DNA of 63,972 nt, the filler included, from Salisapilia sapeloensis CBS 127946 (taxonomy: Eukaryota; Protista; Oomycota), in assembly GCA_023334545.1 (NCBI GenBank). It is 10 parts of 10 records of this genome, joined end to end, with 100 filler letters (N's around TTAATTAATTAA, not from the genome) between each part and the next. Parts side by side here need not be neighbours in the genome. Positions count along the whole stretch, not along the records: positions 25,111 to 55,843 come from JAADVB010000221.1; 9 more parts are not named here. One strand, written 5' to 3'. Position 1 is the first letter of the stretch; every line of letters begins with the position of its first letter. Positions 5,494 to 55,842 of the stretch are shown piece after piece. A program made the translations under genes and the position numbers. A model generated the notes under the pieces. It saw only the letters and a program-made list of their open reading frames with translations, searched no databases and was not told the DNA's origin.

Positions 5494-5591
5494 AAAAGTT
5501 GGCCAGAAGCGTCATGTCTTCTGGTAGGAGGGAGATGGCGACACCGAACGGCACGGCGAACGCAATGATAGAGAGCAAATTCGCTTCGGCA
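5494..5591. repeat. 98-bp exact direct repeat shared with 13774-13871 (the two ends of one contig)
   Basis: Identical sequence aaaagttggccagaagc...gcttcggca at both contig ends. Confidence 0.95.
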
Positions 5592-6298
5592 AAGGCTGCA
5601 GTAATGTTGCTAGGTACAAGCGTCTTGAGCTGACTCTGGAGTGCTTCCGTTAGCGTGCGTTCGGCATACTCGCTCTCGGCCTCGGCAAAGTAGCCGTTGA
5701 TGTCTTCGACCATAAAGATGGACGAGTTGGAGTGGTTACCGTCCGACTTGAACTTTTCATCGACGACACATTCGATGGTGCCGTTGACATTGGTCAGGTA
5801 TTCATCGTCTTCCTGGCACTGGAAAGCGAATTTGGCTGATTCATCCGTCTCTGGTCTCTTCTCGTTGCTGAACACAGGTCGGAAGATGATGACCCAGATG
5901 AGACCTTCGATCGAGGCGCAGACCGTCGTGATCACGTACATGAGTGCAGCCGATGAGCCGATCTTGCCAGCTTTTCCGACAGCAAGCATGTCTGCCATAC
6001 CGACGACCAACGAGCAAAAGACGAGCGGTGCGACTAAGCAGCTCACGGCGTTAATAAAGAGCGTTCCGAGGATGCCGACCCAGGAGGTGACGACTTCGGA
6101 CGGATTCGCGGTTTGCACGGCAATGCCGACAACGATGCCGAGAATGGCGCCGATCAAGACACCAGGGACGCCGAGGTAGTGTTTTTTGATGAACCCTTTG
6201 ATGCCAGGTTGCTGCGGGGGTTTCTCATCATGCTGCTGTTCGTCGTAGAGTGGTGGCGTGCCAGCCACTTCGTAGTCCGCTCCTGGAGATCCTGCCAT
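5494..6298 (-). CDS. DAACS/SLC1 amino acid:cation symporter, copy A, 5' half (truncated by gap)
   Basis: GILGTLFINAVSCLVAPLVFCSLVVG and SNITAAFAEANLLSIIAFAVPFG; collinear with the full paralogue at 9693-11327. Confidence 0.9.
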
Positions 6299-46377: not shown

Positions 46378-46772
46378 CTTGTATCAATAATGTTCTGCAA
46401 GTAGAAATACTCTGTGAATGTGTTTGATAGGCTGTTGTAATTGCTGGAAGGCTGGTAGACCAAAGGTGCTTCTTCCAACGGCACGCACTTGCTATCGAGA
46501 TGAACCAAGTTCTGCTCTGGCGTCGCGATCGACTCGAGCAGCTCACAACCAAGGAATCAGGCTGTCAACATTCTACCACAAGATTGGATAAAATTTATTA
46601 TGGAGGATATTTTATTGGAGGAAAAAGGATTGGTAATCTGGGTAGAGATCTTGAAGCGATGCGAGATGGATACCCACCTTTCTAGGATCTATTTTAGTCC
46701 TTGGACCTGATACTGTGTTTGTTATGCTCTCAATGTTCATCACTGTATGATCGATTTAAGAATACCTGGAAA

Positions 46773-47801
46773 ATGACACATCGAAAGTGCCAGCCTGTGC
46801 CTACAAAGGCTTGTAATGAGGCTAAAGAGACGAAGAATGAGAATGCTCATGTGTTTGGTACTCTCGAGGACTACTTCAATGCGTCTTCGACGTACAAACC
46901 GGAGCAAATGAAACAAGTGAACGATCACTTACCGGCGAACATGCTTCCAAGTTCGGCAATGGCAATGGAAAGACCTGAAATGGAAGAAGAAGTGAACGAA
47001 GATTCTGATGCGAAAGCCACTGAAGGGACGTCGGCAGCTGACGAGAAAGACACTGCAGGAGTCGAGAAACAGGAAGAAAAAGATGACGATGTTGACCCAT
47101 CCTTGATTTCTGCGTCAAGAGTTTCGACTGCTTCAGCAGCTTGCGATGAATATAAAGATGATCTGGATGCGTTTGAGACAGAAGGCGAACCCGATGACGT
47201 CGCTGGGATGACGCTTAGCGATTATCTTCATGCCCACGATCAGGACAGTATATTAAATATATCAGTGCCTCTTCAAACAACGCCAGCGGAGCAGAAAGAT
47301 AGTAAAACATCGACGAATGAACAAAAGGCTACGAGCAAACCTTTGCCGTCGAAAGAACTCGTCTCGGGGATGACACTTGAAGACTACCTTGGTGCCTCAT
47401 CAGTCCAGAAAGCGGAACATCCGACGGTAAACGATATGTCGAGTAGGAAGCAGCCTTTAAAGGTGAACGATAGCTCCCATGAACATCCTCCCATGTCCAA
47501 GCTATTACAAGGACATCCAGATGGCATGCATACACATCGAAAAGCTCGATGGAAACCTCGACAACCAAAGGTGCAGTCGACGGAAGTCATGACCAAACGA
47601 TCTGTTGGGAAGTCCGTTTTACCTACAAAGGCAAGTCCCACGAAGAAAATGAATGCCACATCAGCTTATCATGTTAAGAAAGGTGCATTCGATGCATCAG
47701 CGCCACTGCCCAAGCTACATCAAGGAGGTGGGAAGCAGATGCATTTAACGCATCCAAGTCAAGAGGACGTCGCCACGAAGCGGCTGCCACGTCTATCCTA
47801 G
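46773..47801 (+). CDS. Hypothetical low-complexity/disordered protein with three (M)TL[ES]DY[LF] motifs; start uncertain
   Basis: Open frame of more than 340 codons between two genes, with a polar/charged composition. Confidence 0.6.
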   Translation: MTHRKCQPVPTKACNEAKETKNENAHVFGTLEDYFNASSTYKPEQMKQVNDHLPANMLPSSAMAMERPEMEEEVNEDSDAKATEGTSAADEKDTAGVEKQEEKDDDVDPSLISASRVSTASAACDEYKDDLDAFETEGEPDDVAGMTLSDYLHAHDQDSILNISVPLQTTPAEQKDSKTSTNEQKATSKPLPSKELVSGMTLEDYLGASSVQKAEHPTVNDMSSRKQPLKVNDSSHEHPPMSKLLQGHPDGMHTHRKARWKPRQPKVQSTEVMTKRSVGKSVLPTKASPTKKMNATSAYHVKKGAFDASAPLPKLHQGGGKQMHLTHPSQEDVATKRLPRLS

Positions 47802-47835: not shown

Positions 47836-49312
47836 TTATTCCTCTGGTTTAAACGTCTTTTCAGCGAAATACTGCTTCATTCTCTCCACTTTGTCCACCG
47901 CAACATTGTACGCCGGGTGCACTTGTCCAACGAGATTCTCTGGATCTCCAAACACCACCGGTTCTTCTTTTCCGTTGCCATGCTGCGCGACGGACAGACC
48001 TGCGAGGCAATAGCAGGAATGATAATGATCCCTTGGCTTCCCTGGTTTGTCCCGAAGGCCACCATCCAACTGCTGACAGCACTGGATAATATACTTTTGC
48101 AGCTGTTCTCGATGGCTTTGGAAGACGACGTTCTCGTTGCCAAACTTTTTTCGCAAAGCACTGTCGACGAGTGCTGGGAGGGAGCCTTGCCAGAAGCTGT
48201 AGCAGCCATCTACTAGTTTATTTGTGCGGCCTTGATACCCGCCTTCGAACGGCATTTGTCTGTTGATGAGCCAGAAGACGAATGCTTCCAAGTCTTGCAT
48301 TTTATCGACACTGTCCAGAATGTACAACGCAGCGACGGCGCAGAACGAGTAGCCACCATGCGCCTCGTTGCCTGGTTCACCTCCAAAGCCTCCTTCGTAC
48401 GTTTGGCAGGAGGTGATGTAGTCGACTACTCCGGCCTTCAGCTCTTCCGTGAGGATGCCAAAGAGACTGGCGATCGAGATCACGCAGTACGTGACACGGA
48501 CATCCACTTCTCTATAGAAACCATGAGTCTGATGATACTAGTGCACGAGTAACATAGTAGATAGTACCCTCCGTCATGGGCTGAGAATGCACCGCTAGCA
48601 TGGTCCTTTCGGCTACAAAAGAATTTGTAGAGAGCTTGTCGGTCGACAACCTCATAAGCTTCTGGAGTGCCGAGGAGAGCAAGGGCCAAGCTGGACGCAT
48701 ACGTTGTAGCCGTATGTCCAAATTGCATCGGAGCACCTCCAAAGCCGCCAGCGTTCAGTGGAGACCAGTAGTGTCGGATCGTACCTACATGGCCTCTACG
48801 TGTCAGAAGAGATAAAATATGAATGATGCGGACGAAATACCGATTGCTTGGTCGGCATATGGATCCAAGTTTTCTCCCAACAAGTCTAGTCCATTTAGAA
48901 TCCAATAGATGATCCAAGGATGGCTAGACATTCACAGATGAGGTACGAAGACACTATAAAATGCGTAGGCAGTACCTCGCATCCAATGCGACGAATCCAT
49001 GTGGAAGGCGCCTCAAGCCACTGCGCAGGTACTTGATATGCTTTTCACGCATAAGCCTCGGCTATAAGGTGATAGAACGTTATTTAACACACTGCATCTA
49101 GTGCTAGCCACAGAATTTTCTCCAGTACGTACTTGCAATTGATCATTGACAAACTCGGTTTCTTTGAGCTCATACAACTGGTCTGGTGGCAATCCAGTCA
49201 GCGGAAAGTAGTACATTGCACAGCTCTGTTCACACTCTTGCTGGTCTCGAAAGGTTTTCGTCGGAAACCCATCGCTTTGTGCACGAAAGAGCTCGATCAC
49301 AGATAGATCCAT
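47836..49312 (-). CDS. FNTB: Protein farnesyltransferase beta subunit, 5 exons
   Basis: REKHIKYL..LDASHPWIIYWIL, GGFGGAP.Q.GH.A.TYA, DVRVTYC, YEGGFGGEPGNEAHGGYSFC, GRTNKLVDGCYSFWQ and GLRDKPGKPRDHYHSCYCL. Confidence 0.95.
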
Positions 49313-49448
49313 CTCGTCCTCTACTTTGGTCGTCTTCTGGTCGAAACGAATAAAACCAAATTTAAACGAATAATAAATCAGAGAAACGAATATCCGATTT
49401 ACTATTATTTTCTACTTTTATCTGTAAATGGACAGCTACTTCCGTGAT

Positions 49449-51463
49449 TCACGTTAGTCTCTCGATTGTTTCAGATAGTTCACGTAGAGCTTTATCGGCG
49501 AAACCTTGCTTATTGTTCGTTCGAGTGACTTTCGTCGGCCAGTGACCGCATGTGACACAAAAGTCTTGACTGGCATGCGAGAGCTCGAATCCACATGCTG
49601 GGCAATAGCCATCTGAACCGTGTGCTCTCTTCTTGCCCAAGTTGTCTAAACTTTGAATTTCTTCTATCAGCTTTTCAAAGAAAAAGAGATGTTCTCGGTC
49701 TCGGATGACAACTCGATGCTCTTGCATCACGTGCCTCCTTTTTGCCTCCAACTCTTCATCCGTCCAATACAAGTCAAAATACCCCATTCGCAACGCCGTT
49801 GTCCCTGCACCTTGCTCAATCGGCTCTTTGGTTCGCCATTGAGAATAGCTTTCAGGAAATGCTTTTCGTAGCACCAACTTTCCATAATCAATCTTTCCAG
49901 ACCGAGGGACTGGGCATTGCTCTCCCACAACGTCCTCTTTCTTTAGTTTTAATGCGAAATGGATGACTTTTGGATCTAGAAAAGGACTCAGGACATTCAT
50001 ACCGAAGGAAGCTGCTAGCTTAGAAGAAGTAAACTGCATCACATTTGCAATCTGAGCTCTGTAGGCTTGCAGCGCTTCTTCGTCCATACGATGGTAAAAT
50101 GAGTAGCCACAGAAAATCTCGTCAGCTCCATCTCCTGTTACTACTGTCTGAACACCTAACGCTGCAGCCTTTTCCAGAGTAGCATAGATTACAAGGCTGT
50201 TACGTAGCTCCATTGGATCGAAGGACTGGAGGATGCAACTTACTTTTCTAGCTTTCATGACAAGGTCCTCAAGTGAAATTTGAAGGATATGATGCTCTCC
50301 AATCGATACGCCCTCCAATCTCTGGTATATAGCTGATGCAAATGAAGCATCGTTGGCCGTTGGATTAGCTTGAAGGCTTAGAGCATGATCGAACTTTAGA
50401 ATAGGAACTGCACTGCCGTCTTTATCAAGAGATATGCGTTCGCCAATCGTATCTGCATGGATTACCTGGCTGCTTGCTTCAGCTATGATGGATGTGTCAA
50501 GGCCACCGCTGAGTAAGATGGCATTATTATCCGAATTAGAGAGTTGCTGTTTGCTCTCGGTCAGAACTTGTTGGAGAAGCTGTCGACAGCGAACGACATT
50601 CTCTGGCACTGAATCACGGAGGTAATCAGTACATTCACAATTACCATAAGCATTGGAAACGTCCATGAGGTACTTTAAATCTTTAGTATAATGATACAAG
50701 ATCTGCTCGGAAGAGTACATTTGATTGTGAGACGGAGCCAACGTAATACGAGGTAGGACCCATGCCTTCCAAGCATCTTGCGATATACCCGACTGCTGTT
50801 TTCGACTTTGTTCAAATGCTGCTTCCATTTGCTCTGACAAGACTGAATGCAGATCGCCAGTGTGATCACAAAGATCAGGCTGCCTCTTAAGTCCAAACTC
50901 TTCCTCTTCTTGAGGAGAGAGACCCTCCACATCGAAAATGAGTGCACAGCGAAATGCAAGCCAAGGTCCTAGTGTTGGATGTAAACAGAGCTGAGATGCC
51001 GGACAGTGAGAAACAGCTTTCGAGGCCAGTGCCATCTTTTGAGCGAGAATCATTTTGGATGGCTCAGTATCTGCCACCCAGTACGTGCTGCTTGGACGTG
51101 AAACTTTGTCTGGAAAGGAACGTATTGCAGAATCTACAGATGATTGTACATATCGGTCGATTGGATTCGACTCTATCATGCCACCGTTGCTGCTCCATTC
51201 CTGTGTAATGCTGTCCATAAAAGGTTTCCAGAGTGCCTTTGAATTACCAACAAGAAGCACGAGGTGCGAATTTAAACTAGACGAACTAGTCTTCAACTTG
51301 AACTCTCTATACTTTGGATTGGGCGCAGAAGCTGCAGAAGCATCCAAATATGAATTGTATTGCTCAACAGTCGTGGGAATGAGTACATCGAGGCCTCTAT
51401 CAATGATAGTCCATAAATCAATATATTATTTTACTTTTGATCACATGCATAATGCTTATTCAT
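49449..51463 (-). CDS. Fusion: CblC/MMACHC-like cobalamin-processing domain + asparagine-synthetase-like ATP pyrophosphatase domain + C-terminal CxxC..CxxC; start tentative
   Basis: MMACHC-like GLDVLIP..YN, LVLLVGNSKALWKPF, NPID, ILAQ, CLHPTLGPWLAFR and YSSEQILYHY. AsnB-like LSGGLDTS, TGDGADEIFCGY, PFLD, GKLVLRKAF and WRTKEP. Both lie in one stop-free ORF. Confidence 0.8.
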
Positions 51464-51669
51464 TTACTTGGTAACCAGTGCTTTCTGGAAGAGACGAACG
51501 AGGTCTAAAGAGCTGGTGGAATGGGTCGACATCGGTTTTGTCGTTCGTGTCCACTTTTTGTTGTCAGCTTCGCTCAAGTGCGAATATATCTTGAAAAGAT
51601 GTACGTTTCAGTGCACCTTTTCAAGATCCAAGGAGCAGCCTCGAGTAGTCCTCTTCCGTTCCTGACACG

Positions 51670-53074
51670 ATGATGGCTACTGCAAGCATGATGACGATGC
51701 CTATGTTAATCCTGAACATGGGTTCAGAGATGATTTACGTCTTGGACCAGCGGCTTCGAGCACAAAAAGTGCCACGAGAAAAAAGCACGAAAGGTCTGTG
51801 TCATGTCTTCATCGATGCTTCGATCAAAAATATCATTTGCATTCTAACTGTATTACTTGATAGTCCTGGATGATCTACTACGAGCACTTCATAGAGAAGA
51901 CTTTATAGCTGAAGCTTTTCGCCCTCAGTCTGTACACCACACGAATGCAGCACTAAGACAAGTGTTTGACAAGTTAGCCCATTCATCCATCATGAAACTC
52001 AATTCAAATTCCATGGACAAGGTAGTCAATGTACAAGTCATTAAATTATCCTCTCCATTCACAATTGTATATACTCTTGTAGCTATACGAACTCATGCGG
52101 ATGGGTTTTAAGCATCAGTTGCTCATGTGTGCATCTGCAGATGAGATTCTGCAGGTGACGATGAACCATTTGACCACGACGAAGGGATTGACCGACTGCG
52201 AAAAGGTTAGAAGTCTCATCGACGAATCAGCTCAGAAAGTTACGCAGGTACTTGGTCCCATTCGTTTGCTACAATAAGCTCAATCATGCCCAACTATTTC
52301 CTTGGACAGACGTATGGCCCGATGCTTCCAGGAGACATGTTCGTACTCAAGCAGGAGCTTCTCCTCTTCTTCCAAGACGCTCGTGTCAAAGTATCTCTCT
52401 TTCTACAGACTGGCGTGCAAGAGAAGGACGGCACCATCATCTTACGTTCTGATGGTAACACAGCTTCTGGAGGTCGGAAACCTGGCAGAGTATGCTATTT
52501 TGACGACCAGGGAAGGAAAACCAAAGAGGACTCCTTCTTCATCGCGAGTGCTCAGGAAAGTACGACAGCTCCGACAGGTCACATCCTGAAGCGAGACCCT
52601 GTCCATCCGTACCTTGGCTGTAACATTTACAATACCGAAAATCGTGGTGTTCCTATCGCTCCAAAACCCAGTGACAATGCAATGGCTTCAGCCGGAAAGA
52701 GTGACGGAGTGAAGGCTGCTGCCATGCCTCAAAAGCAGTTCAAAGCAACAGGGTCGGACGGATTAAACTTGCTTGCAAGTCTTGTTGGTACTGGTGCAAC
52801 GAAAGCTTCTGCCAAAGACCAAACGGATAGTGAAGGTCACAAAGCTTTTCGCTTTAACCTCTTCCCGGAAGACGACAGTTCCAAGGCCAAAGATAACGAT
52901 GAAGACCCTGTACCAACGATTTGGATCGATGCATCGAGTGATCCAAAGCAGGCACTCGGCGTCGTACATGACTTTGATGAGGCCAAACTCGATAAGAAGA
53001 AAACAAGAACAGACGATGACACGGACGATCTACTTGTTCTAATGGATACCGCTATTCGAAGTGACAGGAAATGA
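51670..53074 (+). CDS. OSCP1: OSCP1 (organic solute carrier partner 1 / NOR1) family protein, 4 exons
   Basis: MPMLILNMGSEMIYVLDQRLRAQ, LRQVFDKLAHSSIMKLNSNSMDK-LYELMRMGFKHQL and LLLFFQDARVKVSLFL. Confidence 0.9.
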
Positions 53075-53217: not shown

Positions 53218-55842
53218 CTAGGACAGCCGTATCGTCTTCAGACACTTCATGCATTTGTATGCACGAGCGCCAGCAGGTAAACTCAGCAAAGTGTTGCAGT
53301 TCTGACAACGCATAATGTCGTGTGTTGTTCTCGATGACAACTTCGACACACCACGACATGAAGGGCATTTCACAGCTGACGCTCCGTTGCGGACGATCAG
53401 GTGCTTGTTGCAGTGGCCGCAGTGGACAACCTTGGTGTCTTGTGCATCAACACTCGGCGTGTTCTGGAAAGCACTCGATGACTCGGATGACTCGCCAGCC
53501 ATCGGAATCTTTTCCGATGACTGACTGTCACTCCTGTCTAGCTTGGCGGCATCCAACTCGGCTGCAGACGGGCTCGCTCCATTCACGGGTGTGATGCTAT
53601 TGTAACTAGGAGGTTTCTCGATCGGGTTCTGGCAGAATGGACAAGTGACTGGCTTGTCGTTCGAATCGGTACAAAGCTGCACTACTTGCATGCAGCTAGG
53701 GCACGCGACCGACTGCTTTGAGAACGACCCACCGGATGACTTGGAGTTCATAGAACGCGAGGAATTTTCTCCATCCGTACCGAATGCAAACCCTGTGATG
53801 TGCGCTAGACTACTCGCAGGAGCACGCTCTGACGTCTTTTCAGCACCAAGCTGCAGAAGCATTCGTGCAGCTTGTCGACTGTACCGTCTGAACTGACTGG
53901 CATTGGAAATATCAATAAGAATCGAAAGCATGTCCGAGTACTTCTCATACGAACGGAGCTTTTCACGCAAGGATGGCGACATGCAGCAAGTGCGTAGCAG
54001 CTGGAGTACGGGTGACAAGTCCAGATCATGAGAACTAGTAGAAGTACACATCAGTAGCGCTTCGACTGCTACGTCTACGATCCACATCCACTCCCCACTA
54101 TCCTCATTAAAGCTATCATGAACAAGAGCCAGCACGAGATCTACGATCGCCAACTCACACTCGACTACATGCACGTCGGAGAGTTCAGAGACACCTTGCT
54201 TGTGCAGTTCCGACTGAAGAGTTGCAAACGTCTCGGCAGGTATGGCCTGCCAGACACTCGGTGTCTCATACATTGTCAGCAGTCCTTCACATGCAGCGAC
54301 GTAGATTCCAGGAGACGCGTGACCATCGATGAACGTGGTCATCACTTGCACATACAGACTAGCTATTCTAGCCAAGAGCGTCGTTTTCTCCTCATCTTCT
54401 CTCTCCATCGTCGATTCACCCACCAGAACACAATCGAGGAACGGCAGTCCTTGCGTCAGCATCTTCATCTGCATTTCGTCTTTCTCACTTGTCAGCGTAA
54501 CATACTCGAGAACCATCAACACAGTATCGATGATGCTGTTCGTCTGCAAGAACACATCTCGATTCGGTTGTTCATCCGACAGACGGAATACCAAGGTGCA
54601 TGCACGTGTAAGGACATCCACAGCCGCTGCATTCGCATCCATAAGCTCTTCTGCACTCGTAACGCCTTCCAGTCCAGTCTCTATAGCGCCATTGAACGTC
54701 TCGATGAAGTCGTCGCACAGCATGATTCCCTCTTGACCGGATCTCCCCTGGTCTGCAATTCCGAGCAGCAGTCCAAGCGCATCGGCCGTGTCCAATTGAC
54801 TACCACGACTCGCCTGCAGGATCTCTAGTAAAACACCAGCACCACCGGATCGAGTAAAGTAAGCAATGTCATGCCTTCCGATGCGATTCAGCAACTTCTT
54901 AATCGCGTCCACTACTTCCGGTGCCAACTCCTCTCCGTCCTCCGCATTCGAGGCTTTGAGTATCGACACCATCGTATCAATACCTCCATGCGATACGATT
55001 TTACGACTAAAACCTTCCCAACCAGAGACGAGTGTAAGAAGTGTGATGATACGCGACGAGAAAGAAGGGGACACGTGATGGTCTTCACTCCCGAGCGTGT
55101 CTAAAAGGGCCTTTACAACCTCTTCCACTTCTGTAATGCATACGGAAGACAAATTCGACGCTTGTGTGCTATCCAACAGGACATACAGTAGGTTGCATCG
55201 CTTCAACGCTGCGTCTTCATTCTCCACCATGTCTGTCTCCATAATCTCTTCGCCGACTTCGATGAGAAATTCAGATTCCTTGTCTTCGTTCTCAGATGGG
55301 AGACTGCGTAGCTGCTCGTAGAACATCTTTAGAGAAGCTTCGTCGGTGATACCGTCGTGGAGGATGGAAATGACACTGTCTTGTATCCGATCTGTGCCTT
55401 TCTGTAGCCAGTAGACAAAGCAGGAAGCAGCGGTGGTGACTAGGATTTCCTTCTGTGGTTCACTCAAGCTTTCTCCATTGGTCAACAACAAGCACAGCGA
55501 CATGACACCCATGCGAGACGTCCGTATGTCTTCGTCCATTAAAAATTCAATGATTTTAGAGATGAGAACTTCGCGTTGCTCGTCTGTTAGTCCGACCTCT
55601 TCATCTTGTAACCGGCTTGGAGACTTGTGAACAATGTCAGTCAGTTTCCTCGCGGCAGTTACTTGCACTTCCCGATGACTAGCAGCCTCTAAAACGCTAA
55701 ACACAGTACGCACGTCCGCTGATTTCACCAAATAGTCCCACAGAGGACAAGTCGAAAAGTCCGAGCTCACGAGGTTCAGGACGATCTGCTCCGCCGTCTC
55801 TGATACTTCTTCCGGACCATGGAGGACGTTCCGGATGATCAC
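53218..55842 (-). CDS. Armadillo/HEAT-like helical-repeat protein with C-terminal LSD1-type zinc fingers; 5' end lost in gap
   Basis: ARM-like segments (IVSHGGIDTMVSIL, FTRSGGAGVLLEIL). LSD1-type fingers CGHCNKHLIVRNGASAVKCPSC and CQNCNTLLSLPAGARAYKCMKC. Confidence 0.78.
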   Translation of the reverse strand: MIIRNVLHGPEEVSETAEQIVLNLVSSDFSTCPLWDYLVKSADVRTVFSVLEAASHREVQVTAARKLTDIVHKSPSRLQDEEVGLTDEQREVLISKIIEFLMDEDIRTSRMGVMSLCLLLTNGESLSEPQKEILVTTAASCFVYWLQKGTDRIQDSVISILHDGITDEASLKMFYEQLRSLPSENEDKESEFLIEVGEEIMETDMVENEDAALKRCNLLYVLLDSTQASNLSSVCITEVEEVVKALLDTLGSEDHHVSPSFSSRIITLLTLVSGWEGFSRKIVSHGGIDTMVSILKASNAEDGEELAPEVVDAIKKLLNRIGRHDIAYFTRSGGAGVLLEILQASRGSQLDTADALGLLLGIADQGRSGQEGIMLCDDFIETFNGAIETGLEGVTSAEELMDANAAAVDVLTRACTLVFRLSDEQPNRDVFLQTNSIIDTVLMVLEYVTLTSEKDEMQMKMLTQGLPFLDCVLVGESTMEREDEEKTTLLARIASLYVQVMTTFIDGHASPGIYVAACEGLLTMYETPSVWQAIPAETFATLQSELHKQGVSELSDVHVVECELAIVDLVLALVHDSFNEDSGEWMWIVDVAVEALLMCTSTSSHDLDLSPVLQLLRTCCMSPSLREKLRSYEKYSDMLSILIDISNASQFRRYSRQAARMLLQLGAEKTSERAPASSLAHITGFAFGTDGENSSRSMNSKSSGGSFSKQSVACPSCMQVVQLCTDSNDKPVTCPFCQNPIEKPPSYNSITPVNGASPSAAELDAAKLDRSDSQSSEKIPMAGESSESSSAFQNTPSVDAQDTKVVHCGHCNKHLIVRNGASAVKCPSCRGVSKLSSRTTHDIMRCQNCNTLLSLPAGARAYKCMKCLKTIRLS

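What the first reader, a model, noticed from the sequence alone, without database searches (positions are those of the whole stretch)
49449..51463. CblC/MMACHC-like B12-processing domain fused to a glutaminase-less asparagine-synthetase-like ATP pyrophosphatase: candidate cobalamin remodelling/repair enzyme
Seen in the sequence: one stop-free ORF carries a full-length MMACHC-like domain. Its motifs match human CblC in order: GLDVLIP..YN ~ GFEVYPF..YN; LVLLVGNS..KPF ~ LAFLVLST..KPF; NPID ~ DPVD; ILAQ; CLHPTLGPWLAFR ~ CIHPRFGGWFAIR; YSSEQ..Y ~ YSEEQ..Y. An AsnB synthetase domain follows (PP-loop SGGLDT, TGDGADE..GY, PFLD, KLVLR, WR.KE), then a CxxC..CxxC knuckle. There is no N-terminal Cys1 Ntn-glutaminase domain, and the usual GEG is GDG. 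Established knowledge: CblC removes the upper ligand of incoming cobalamin; AsnB-fold domains adenylate a carboxylate for amide formation; the corrin ring carries amide side chains. Inference: the fusion may couple B12 decyanation/dealkylation to ATP-dependent (re)amidation of corrinoid carboxylates, i.e. salvage or repair of B12 analogues in a eukaryote. It could instead link B12 handling to an unrelated amidation. I do not recognise this architecture from any described protein, but I could not search.
Basis: partly seen in the sequence, partly recalled or inferred. Interest (0 to 1): 0.78.

Follow-up and report, generated by a model that had tools for sequence, protein, structure and literature searches.

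The report
B12-processing enzyme fused to amide ligase
An oomycete gene, expressed as one transcript, joins a vitamin-B12-processing (CblC) domain to an uncharacterised asparagine-synthetase-like enzyme, and relatives of that enzyme in bacteria and archaea lie in B12-salvage operons, some under B12 riboswitches, so it is probably a new enzyme that acts on scavenged B12.

Summary
One minus-strand gene has two exons (51532-51468 and 51396-49449) and a 71-nt GT..AG intron, and encodes 670 aa. RNA contigs from 4 runs of one study show the splice and cover both halves in a single contig.

The N-terminal half is a divergent member of the MMACHC/CblC family. It falls below the Pfam cut-off, but its profile matches human MMACHC at E 2.5e-7, and the 20 best Foldseek hits are all CblC structures. 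The arginines matching GSH-pocket R161 and R206 are invariant.

The C-terminal half is an AsnB-type PP-loop synthetase domain. It has no glutaminase domain, reads TGDGADE where AsnB has GEG, and ends in a Zn ribbon.

New here: this "AsnB-Zn" family is tied to corrinoids many times over.
- It is fused to CblC in all oomycetes sampled, in the red alga Pyropia, and in unnamed lineages.
- It is fused to BtuF-type binding domains in green algae, to CobY in an archaeon, and to DUF71-B12.
- In 20 of 33 prokaryotic loci outside Nitrosopumilales it lies within 4 kb of BtuB/BtuFCD, CbiZ, CbiB, CobS/T/U/Y, CobA or DUF71-B12.
- In three bacteria the gene or its operon lies downstream of a cobalamin riboswitch.

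The best reading is an ATP-dependent amide ligase acting on the corrinoid held by CblC, in salvage or repair. The chemistry is untested, and I found no description of it in the literature searched.

The parts
51468..51532 (-). Exon 1: start ATG at 51532-51530, 21 codons plus 2 nt. It encodes the N-terminal helix of the CblC domain.
   Evidence: The sequence and phase fit. It matches the N-termini of the homologues (LxxxLxxKGLDV). RNA contigs reach 51488-51530.
51397..51467 (-). Intron of 71 nt, GTAAAT..TGATAG
   Evidence: The joint 51396->51468 is seen in 4 of 4 RNA-derived runs, and the sequence was read.
49449..51396 (-). Exon 2: the rest of the CDS through the stop TGA at 49449-49451
   Evidence: RNA contigs cover 49402-51396 without a break.
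50613..51396 (-). MMACHC/CblC-like domain (together with exon 1). HPTLGPW..R lies at 50949-50987. R150 and R217 (exon-2 numbering) align with human R161 and R206.
   Evidence: The role of the GSH-pocket arginines is from PMC9464900.
49629..50606 (-). AsnB-type PP-loop synthetase domain with no glutaminase domain: PP-loop SGGLDT at 50493-50510, TGDGADE at 50118-50138, catalytic-Lys motif WRTKEP at 49821-49838
49548..49604 (-). C-terminal CxxC..CxxC zinc ribbon, a signature of the whole AsnB-Zn family
   Evidence: The four Cys are invariant in A3, A5 and A6.
49402..51530 (-). Extent of the transcript as seen in RNA contigs, with short UTRs
   Evidence: no contig cover at 49362-49401, and next to none between 51531 and 51643, so the transcript is separate from both neighbours.

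Best explanation
The gene encodes a cytosolic, bifunctional protein for handling vitamin B12.

Step 1 is inferred from homology. The N-terminal CblC domain takes up incoming cobalamin and removes its upper ligand, by GSH-dependent dealkylation or reductive decyanation, as human MMACHC does.

Step 2 is inferred from AsnB homology plus genomic association. The C-terminal AsnB-Zn domain binds ATP at its PP-loop and adenylates a free carboxylate on the corrinoid. It then forms an amide, most simply with free ammonia because no glutaminase is present. This would restore or complete the carboxamide side chains of scavenged, partly deamidated or incomplete corrinoids before they pass to MetH, MCM or RNR II.

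The C-domain belongs to a widespread, uncharacterised family found in archaea, bacteria and B12-using eukaryotes. In prokaryotes its members are encoded inside corrinoid uptake, salvage and remodelling operons, usually next to DUF71-B12.
For: Shown:
- It is one expressed gene on one transcript.
- The fusion is conserved in every oomycete sampled, at 39-57% identity.
- The same fusion is a single 899-aa ORF in Pyropia (hhalign probability 99.8, E 8e-30) and occurs in five further cluster representatives.
- The CblC identity of the N half rests.
- The C-domain keeps its catalytic apparatus: the PP-loop, the D-x-x-D-E cluster and the Lys of WR.KE are all invariant.

Independent links between the C-domain family and B12:
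- Fusions to Peripla_BP_2 ('Fe/B12 periplasmic-binding') in Prasinoderma, Closterium and three other clusters.
- A fusion to a CobY-like domain (NF045495, 1.5e-27), with CobS overlapping it by 4 nt, in a Thermoprotei archaeon.
- A fusion to DUF71 carrying the B12-subgroup motif ENGEFH.
- In 80 GTDB loci, 20 of 33 loci outside Nitrosopumilales carry specific B12 genes within 4 kb. Examples are L030 (BtuF-BtuC-BtuD-AsnBZn-DUF71-CobD-CbiB-CbiZ) and L023 (BtuB-AsnBZn-DUF71-BtuFCD), with overlapping stops and starts.
- A cobalamin riboswitch lies directly upstream of the gene in L020, and upstream of the operon in L023 and L025.

Phyletic pattern: among fungi, only non-Dikarya lineages appear. These are the B12-using fungi (PMC8085122). 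Phytophthora has MetH, MCM and RNR II (PMC2667541).
Against: There is no biochemical evidence for any family member.

The acidic cluster is retained. In human ASNS it binds the alpha-amino group of aspartyl-AMP (PMC6748925), so an amino-acid-like substrate remains possible.

In about 45 Nitrosopumilales loci the gene sits in a conserved neighbourhood unrelated to B12.

In chytrids the standalone CblC-like and AsnB-Zn genes are not adjacent, though the two loci checked come from different genera.

The binding domains fused in green algae score best against haem and siderophore binders, not BtuF specifically.

Which carboxylate and which nucleophile are used is unknown. From my own knowledge, oomycetes are not known to need added B12 in culture.
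Confidence: 0.62

Rival explanations
1. The C-domain is a nucleotide-loop ligase, a soluble counterpart of CbiB. It would adenylate the f-propionate of cobyric acid and join it to aminopropanol (phosphate) or a related amine. The protein would then serve cobamide remodelling rather than side-chain repair.
For: The family is fused to CobY and translationally coupled to CobS. It clusters with CbiZ, a CobD-like decarboxylase, and CobS/T/U/Y. CbiZ produces the cobyric acid that such a ligase would use.
Against: CbiB itself is present in the same operon in L030 and next to the gene in L019. The L023 and L025 operons hold only transport genes plus the two PP-loop enzymes. The 30.7-kb piece held here carries no B12 gene, and whether the oomycete genome encodes CobS, CobT or CobY could not be checked. 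With no glutaminase, ammonia is the simplest nucleophile.
Confidence: 0.14
2. The C-domain amidates a non-corrinoid carboxylate, for example ammonia-dependent Asp to Asn, or a thiol or peptide cofactor used by CblC. The fusions and operons would then reflect co-regulation or supply of a co-substrate rather than chemistry on B12.
For: AsnB is the closest solved and curated relative. The acidic D..DE cluster and the Lys are retained. Nitrosopumilales contexts are unrelated to B12.
Against: Scores fall far below the AsnB equivalog cut-off (98.6 against 499 bits). E348 is replaced, and D384 and R387 of E. coli AsnB fall in gaps. Repeated independent fusions to corrinoid-binding or corrinoid-processing domains, together with riboswitch control, are hard to explain for a housekeeping Asn synthetase.
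Confidence: 0.14
3. The C-domain does not form amides on B12. It either runs the reverse reaction as an amidohydrolase, as was cautiously proposed for DUF71-B12, or acts as an ATP-dependent adaptor or chaperone that hands cobalamin to client enzymes in a CblD-like role.
For: A hydrolase role was proposed for DUF71-B12, its usual neighbour (PMC3541065). The full-length model packs the two domains confidently (pTM 0.81). No MMADHC gene could be examined here.
Against: All residues needed for adenylation are invariant. PP-loop enzymes are rarely hydrolases, a point raised by a reviewer in PMC3541065. Standalone prokaryotic members have no CblC partner.
Confidence: 0.1

Closest known systems
Human MMACHC / CblC (PDB 3SC0, 3SOM, 5UOS) and C. 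elegans CblC (5UJC)
   Same: The fold is the same over the whole domain (Foldseek E 1e-7, about 250 aligned columns). The profile matches at E 2.5e-7. The H-P-x-x-G-x-W..R block is conserved, as are the arginines equivalent to R161 and R206 of the GSH pocket.
   Different: Identity is only 17-22%, and the match is below Pfam's cut-off. The domain belongs to the 'YHYTKD(R)' subgroup, which is mostly found in microbes. No clear equivalent of R230 was seen. It lacks the Pro-rich tail and carries a 400-aa enzyme domain instead.
E. coli AsnB / human ASNS, C-terminal synthetase domain (1CT9, 6GQ3)
   Same: It is the closest solved relative (E 4.6e-37; Foldseek E 9e-13). The PP-loop SGGxD, the equivalents of D351 and E352, and the catalytic Lys in WRxKE are conserved.
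   Different: There is no Ntn glutaminase domain. GEG becomes GDG. D384 and R387 fall in gaps. A C-terminal Zn ribbon is added. It scores 98.6 bits against the equivalog cut-off of 499.
Beta-lactam synthetase and carbapenam synthetase (1JGT, 1Q15)
   Same: These are AsnB-fold enzymes that use the adenylation chemistry on non-Asp carboxylates without glutamine hydrolysis. They are the next-best structural hits.
   Different: They keep a dead glutaminase-like N-domain and form intramolecular lactams. They have no Zn ribbon and no link to B12.
DUF71-B12 subgroup (COG2102 PP-loop ATPases; de Crecy-Lagard et al. 2012, PMC3541065)
   Same: It is also an uncharacterised PP-loop ATPase predicted from gene clustering to act in B12 salvage. 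It is the commonest immediate neighbour of AsnB-Zn (13 loci, median gap 49 nt) and is once fused to it.
   Different: It is a different family (Diphthami_syn_2, not Asn_synthase). That paper does not link the glutaminase-less AsnB-Zn family to B12 salvage.
CbiA/CobB and CbiP/CobQ (known corrinoid amidotransferases) and CbiB
   Same: The proposed chemistry is the same: ATP-dependent conversion of corrin side-chain carboxylates to amides.
   Different: From my own knowledge, these have an unrelated fold (MinD-like ATPase plus GATase, or membrane CbiB), depend on glutamine and work through phosphorylated intermediates. They act on biosynthetic intermediates in a fixed order. The Pfam scans of the window protein list no such family.

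Membership tests
MMACHC / CblC (PF16690) | Score at or above Pfam's gathering cut-off (27 bits) | tested here: not met
   The window protein scores 15.3-19.2 bits. The Saprolegniales orthologues P0038, P0041 and P0045 do carry a precomputed PF16690 hit.
MMACHC / CblC (PF16690) | Profile-level homology to solved or annotated MMACHC proteins over the whole domain | tested here: met
   Profile A2 matches human MMACHC at E 2.5e-7 over residues 5-176. It finds 85 hits, many carrying PF16690 or named cyanocobalamin reductase, with standalone proteins down to E 8e-43.
MMACHC / CblC (PF16690) | CblC fold | tested here: met
   The model has pLDDT 94 and pTM 0.90. The 20 best PDB hits are all CblC, and the next hits (QueG, RdhA) have E above 0.4.
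MMACHC / CblC (PF16690) | GSH-pocket arginines R161, R206 and R230 | tested here: inconclusive
   The equivalents of R161 and R206 are invariant in 42 sequences (R150 and R217). R230 has no clear equivalent.
MMACHC / CblC (PF16690) | Cobalamin binding with decyanase and dealkylase activity | not testable with these tools
   This needs recombinant protein.
Asparagine synthetase B (glutamine-hydrolysing) | N-terminal Ntn glutaminase domain with Cys1 | tested here: not met
   There are no GATase hits, and the CblC domain occupies the N-terminus.
Asparagine synthetase B (glutamine-hydrolysing) | PP-loop SGGxDS and catalytic Lys (Ec K449 / Hs K466) | tested here: met
   SGGLDT and WRTKEP are present and invariant across the family.
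Asparagine synthetase B (glutamine-hydrolysing) | Asp-site residues E348 (GEG), D384 and R387, and the equivalog score | tested here: not met
   E348 is replaced by D (TGDGADE). D384 and R387 fall in alignment gaps. The score is 98.6 bits against a cut-off of 499.
AsnB-Zn family (unnamed; delimited here) | Glutaminase-less Asn_synthase domain with TGDG[AGS]DE and a C-terminal CxxC..CxxC | tested here: met
   These features are invariant in A5 and A6 and in the fusion proteins. The window protein lies inside the eukaryote clade, which has 99/100 support.
AsnB-Zn family (unnamed; delimited here) | Association with corrinoid genes or domains | tested here: met
   The window protein is fused to CblC. 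Elsewhere the family shows fusions, operons and riboswitches.
DUF71-B12 (COG2102) | Diphthami_syn_2 domain with an ENGE[FY]H motif | tested here: not met
   The window protein has no such domain. It is a neighbour or fusion partner of relatives only.

The most novel reading that the evidence does not exclude
AsnB-Zn, probably working with DUF71-B12, is a so-far unrecognised enzyme that repairs or completes the carboxamide side chains of scavenged corrinoids. It would be conserved from sediment archaea and bacteria to algae, early-diverging fungi and oomycetes. In oomycetes and red algae it is welded to CblC, which would make it the first B12 'metabolite-repair' activity known in eukaryotes.
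Probability: 0.35. Interest if true: 0.88.

Novelty: new variant of a known kind. Interest (0 to 1): 0.8.

Why it matters
B12 is made only by some prokaryotes, and everything else lives on scavenged and often imperfect corrinoids. Known salvage covers uptake, adenosylation and exchange of the lower ligand. No enzyme is known that restores lost side-chain amides, and eukaryotic B12 processing is thought to involve only CblC, CblD and their clients.

This gene, and the family it exposes, gives a concrete and testable candidate for a missing salvage or repair step. The family has more than 500 cluster representatives at E<1e-30, and in some bacteria it is under riboswitch control. It also points to a working partner for the long-unassigned DUF71-B12 family. 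Finally, it identifies what appears to be the oomycete form of CblC: no standalone oomycete MMACHC turned up in the word-limited search.

Whether it bears on how plant- and animal-pathogenic oomycetes, algae and early fungi cope with B12 analogues in nature is open.

Tried and rejected
1. All RNA contigs use the 71-nt intron 51467-51397.
2. A single-sequence search of the N half against PDB found nothing. A family profile was needed.
3. Gene adjacency of standalone CblC-like and AsnB-Zn genes in chytrids: none was seen around the AsnB-Zn gene of Spizellomyces or the CblC-like gene of Gaertneriomyces, which are different genera.
4. A hidden CblC domain in the linker regions of the green-algal binding-protein fusions: none, with hhalign probability below 1%.
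5. Whether those Peripla_BP_2 domains are specifically BtuF-like is inconclusive. The best matches are IsdE (haem), a PGF-anchored binding protein, and a Fe-hydroxamate binder.
6. AsnB-Zn as a replacement for CbiB is disfavoured, because CbiB is in the same operon in L030 and next to the gene in L019.
7. The first Dehalococcoidia contexts were set aside as one syntenic lineage until the GTDB survey gave independent lineages.
8. Nitrosopumilales loci have no B12 neighbours.
9. Five literature searches found no paper linking an asparagine-synthase-like protein to MMACHC or cobamide salvage. The one co-mention, in PMC2667541, concerns a different protein. Most subscription journals are not in the library searched.
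11. Complex prediction was not used. The two domains are one chain, and the report does not rest on an interface.
Full report
**The gene.** The finding lies on the minus strand. The long open frame ends at TGA 49449-49451 and is stop-free upstream to about 51422. Upstream of that, an ATG at 51532-51530 opens 65 nt of coding sequence that ends in a GT donor. A 71-nt intron (51467-51397, GTAAAT..TGATAG) joins it in phase, through the junction codon AAA, to 51396. The product is 670 aa.

The N-termini of the homologues (consensus L..L..KGLDV) match exon 1. Contigs from four public runs of one study carry spliced joints in this gene and in both neighbours, so they derive from RNA. All four show the joint 51396->51468. 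Single contigs run 49402-51396 + 51468-51497 and 49433-51396 + 51468-51488. Cover is absent at 49362-49401 and all but absent between 51531 and 51643, next to the neighbouring genes.

All searches used exon 2 by reference, which covers 649 of the 670 residues.

**The organism.** The neighbouring genes are ordinary eukaryotic ones: a P-type ATPase, a PPR protein, ALG11, an FHA protein, a 2-hydroxyacid dehydrogenase, prenyltransferase beta and an OSCP1-like protein. The best matches to the protein are oomycete proteins at 39-57% identity. In a tree of the C-domain the window groups with Globisporangium and Phytophthora, inside the oomycetes. No identical protein is in the collections.

**The N-terminal half.**
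- Pfam's MMACHC model scores only 15-19 bits against a cut-off of 27, and a single-sequence search of PDB finds nothing.
- A profile of 15 oomycete N-domains matches human MMACHC at E 2.5e-7 over residues 5-176.
- The same profile retrieves more than 80 standalone MMACHC-family proteins, down to E 8e-43, including entries named cyanocobalamin reductase.
- In a 42-sequence alignment the invariant residues include H140, G144, P145, W146, R150 and R217. These align with human H151, G155, G156, W157, R161 and R206.
- R161, R206 and R230 form the glutathione pocket, and R161 and R206 are sites of disease mutations (PMC9464900).
- The AlphaFold model (pLDDT 94, pTM 0.90) has only human and C. elegans CblC structures among its 20 best PDB hits, at full length. 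The next hits are other B12-binding folds at E above 0.4.

This is a genuine but divergent CblC domain of the 'YHYTKD' subgroup.

**The C-terminal half.**
- Asn_synthase scores 8e-19. A family profile matches E. coli AsnB residues 210-506 at E 4.6e-37, followed by human ASNS, beta-lactam synthetase and CarA. The full-length model gives the same order (pLDDT 83, pTM 0.81).
- There is no glutaminase domain.
- The PP-loop (SGGLDT), the D-x-x-D-E cluster (TGDGADE) and the Lys of WRTKEP are invariant. These match ASNS S/G/E364, D367, E368 and K466 (PMC6748925).
- E348 of AsnB is replaced by Asp, and D384 and R387 fall in gaps.
- A CxxC..CxxC ribbon closes the protein and is invariant across the family, prokaryotic members included.
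- No curated NCBIfam model claims the domain (98.6 bits against 499 for AsnB).

I call the family AsnB-Zn.

**Distribution of the fusion.**
- The CblC::AsnB-Zn fusion is present in Globisporangium, Pythium, Phytophthora, Nothophytophthora, Lagenidium, Aphanomyces, Achlya, Thraustotheca and Saprolegnia. It is annotated only as 'Asparagine synthetase domain-containing protein'.
- In the red alga Pyropia yezoensis the annotated 429-aa model is mis-spliced. The genome holds one 899-aa ORF with the CblC-like part (hhalign probability 99.8, E 8e-30) followed by AsnB-Zn. P0061 is the same protein.
- An exhaustive profile search found 537 cluster representatives at E<1e-30. With my own HMMs it showed five more CblC fusions of unnamed origin: P0275, P0287, P0303, P0305 and P0312.
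- In the tree the fusions fall into two subclades of a well-supported eukaryote clade, but the backbone is unresolved. One ancient fusion and two separate fusions cannot be told apart.
- Standalone AsnB-Zn occurs in chytrids, Kickxellomycotina, Mortierellomycotina and other Mucoromycota, in Volvocales, and in many archaea. No Dikarya or land-plant protein appeared among the hits. The fungal pattern matches the distribution of B12 use in fungi (PMC8085122). Phytophthora species have MetH, MCM and class II RNR (PMC2667541).

**Independent links of AsnB-Zn to corrinoids.** This is the new evidence.
- Other fusions:
  - Peripla_BP_2 ('Fe/B12 periplasmic-binding domain') in Prasinoderma coloniale, Closterium and three further clusters.
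  - DUF71 carrying the B12-subgroup motif ENGEFH (the motif is defined in PMC3541065).
  - A CobY-like nucleotidyltransferase in a Thermoprotei archaeon (NF045495, 1.5e-27).
- In that archaeon the fusion gene overlaps an upstream CobS gene by 4 nt.
- Operons: a scan of GTDB species genomes with the family-specific pattern TGD[GA][AGC]DELF returned 80 loci. I called ORFs, clustered the neighbours within 4 kb, and named the cluster representatives with Pfam and NCBIfam.
  - The immediate neighbour in 13 loci, at a median gap of 49 nt, is DUF71.
  - Other recurrent neighbours are BtuD-, BtuC- and BtuF-type transport genes, a TonB-dependent receptor that scores best against the vitamin B12 receptor model, CobA, CbiZ, CbiB, a CobD-like decarboxylase, CobU, CobT, CobS and CobY-like genes.
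  - Twenty of the 33 loci outside Nitrosopumilales have at least one such gene within 4 kb. They span Dehalococcoidia, Nitrospirota, Desulfobacterales, Thermodesulfobacteriota, Thermoprotei, Bathyarchaeia, Hadarchaeota, Methanosarcinales, Thermoplasmata and Nitrososphaerales.
  - Stops and starts overlap. L023 reads BtuB-AsnBZn-DUF71-BtuF-BtuC-BtuD. L030 reads BtuF-BtuC-BtuD-AsnBZn-DUF71-CobD-CbiB-CbiZ.
- Riboswitches: Rfam finds a cobalamin riboswitch just upstream of AsnB-Zn in L020, and upstream of the operon in L025 (120 bits) and L023 (two copies).

**Exceptions.** About 45 Nitrosopumilales loci share a conserved neighbourhood unrelated to B12. The chytrid genes are not adjacent.

**Mechanism.**
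- Shown: the domain identities, the conserved catalytic residues, the single transcript and the genomic associations.
- Inferred: the CblC domain binds and de-ligands incoming cobalamin. AsnB-Zn then adenylates a corrinoid carboxylate and forms an amide, most simply with ammonia.

Two observations favour re-amidation of side chains on imported corrinoids over re-ligation of the nucleotide loop. CbiB co-occurs with the family (L030). Some riboswitch operons hold only transport genes plus the two PP-loop enzymes (L023, L025). The loop-ligation reading stays open, as do a non-corrinoid substrate, hinted at by the retained acidic pocket, and a hydrolytic or chaperone role.

**Novelty.** Both folds are known. 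The 2012 DUF71 study predicted a PP-loop enzyme in B12 salvage and noted AsnB::DUF71 fusions in the diphthamide context. I found no paper that links a glutaminase-less AsnB-like family, or a CblC fusion, to cobamide metabolism. Most subscription journals are not in the library searched.

**Verdict.** The reaction itself still needs an assay.

Noticed in passing
L013-L033, L060 (e.g. L023:8885-9574, L030:8900-9604): DUF71 (Diphthami_syn_2) is the commonest immediate neighbour of AsnB-Zn: 13 loci, often with overlapping stop and start. Four of the 13 neighbours carry ENGEYH, which fits the ENGE[FY]H signature of the DUF71-B12 subgroup. The two uncharacterised PP-loop enzymes probably work as a pair.
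   Followed up: partly
L020:6593-6797; L025:5851-6037; L023:5073-5473 and 5563-5858: Cobalamin riboswitches (RF00174) lie upstream of AsnB-Zn or of BtuB-AsnBZn-DUF71-BtuF operons. L023 has two in tandem.
   Followed up: partly
L010:5071-7770 (Pyropia yezoensis CM020619.1): The annotated 429-aa gene model skips coding sequence. One uninterrupted 899-aa ORF encodes CblC-like plus AsnB-Zn. In it the HP of the HPxxGPW block is replaced (..SDVWGGW..).
   Followed up: yes
P0310/P0422 (Prasinoderma), P0346 (Closterium), P0315, P0362, P0376: Green-lineage and unnamed proteins of 970-1700 aa join a Peripla_BP_2 binding domain to AsnB-Zn. In a regex motif search, P0315, P0346 and P0376 showed no recognisable PP-loop or TGDGxDE motif, so they may be inactive. 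Their 350-450-aa linkers have no recognised domain.
   Followed up: partly
L017:1461-2855: In a Nitrospirae MAG a radical-SAM peptide maturase (TIGR04163, rSAM_cobopep / CbpB, 687 bits) sits between AsnB-Zn and DUF71-CbiZ, followed by two further radical-SAM genes.
   Followed up: no
window 50619-50685: One low-depth contig (run X4, depth 2) skips 65 nt at the boundary between the two domains. Its ends read GT..AG on the plus strand, the wrong strand for this gene. It may be an antisense or artefactual joint, and it is absent from the other three runs.
   Followed up: no
window 47836-49361 (-) and 51644-53074 (+): The downstream neighbour is a prenyltransferase beta subunit, with introns of 52 nt (48924-48975) and 71 nt (49062-49132) and about 10-fold higher contig depth. 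The divergent upstream neighbour has introns at 51792-51861 and 52020-52080 and a weak OSCP1 match.
   Followed up: partly
window 53221-55842 (-) and 46701-47798 (+): Long ORFs of 874 aa and 366 aa have no Pfam family at E<=1e-4.
   Followed up: no
P0285/P0417 (Entophlyctis), P0308, P0291, P0299: AsnB-Zn also appears joined to a polysaccharide deacetylase, a NIF phosphatase, DUF924, and a C2/GRAM protein. These may be merged gene models rather than true fusions.
   Followed up: no
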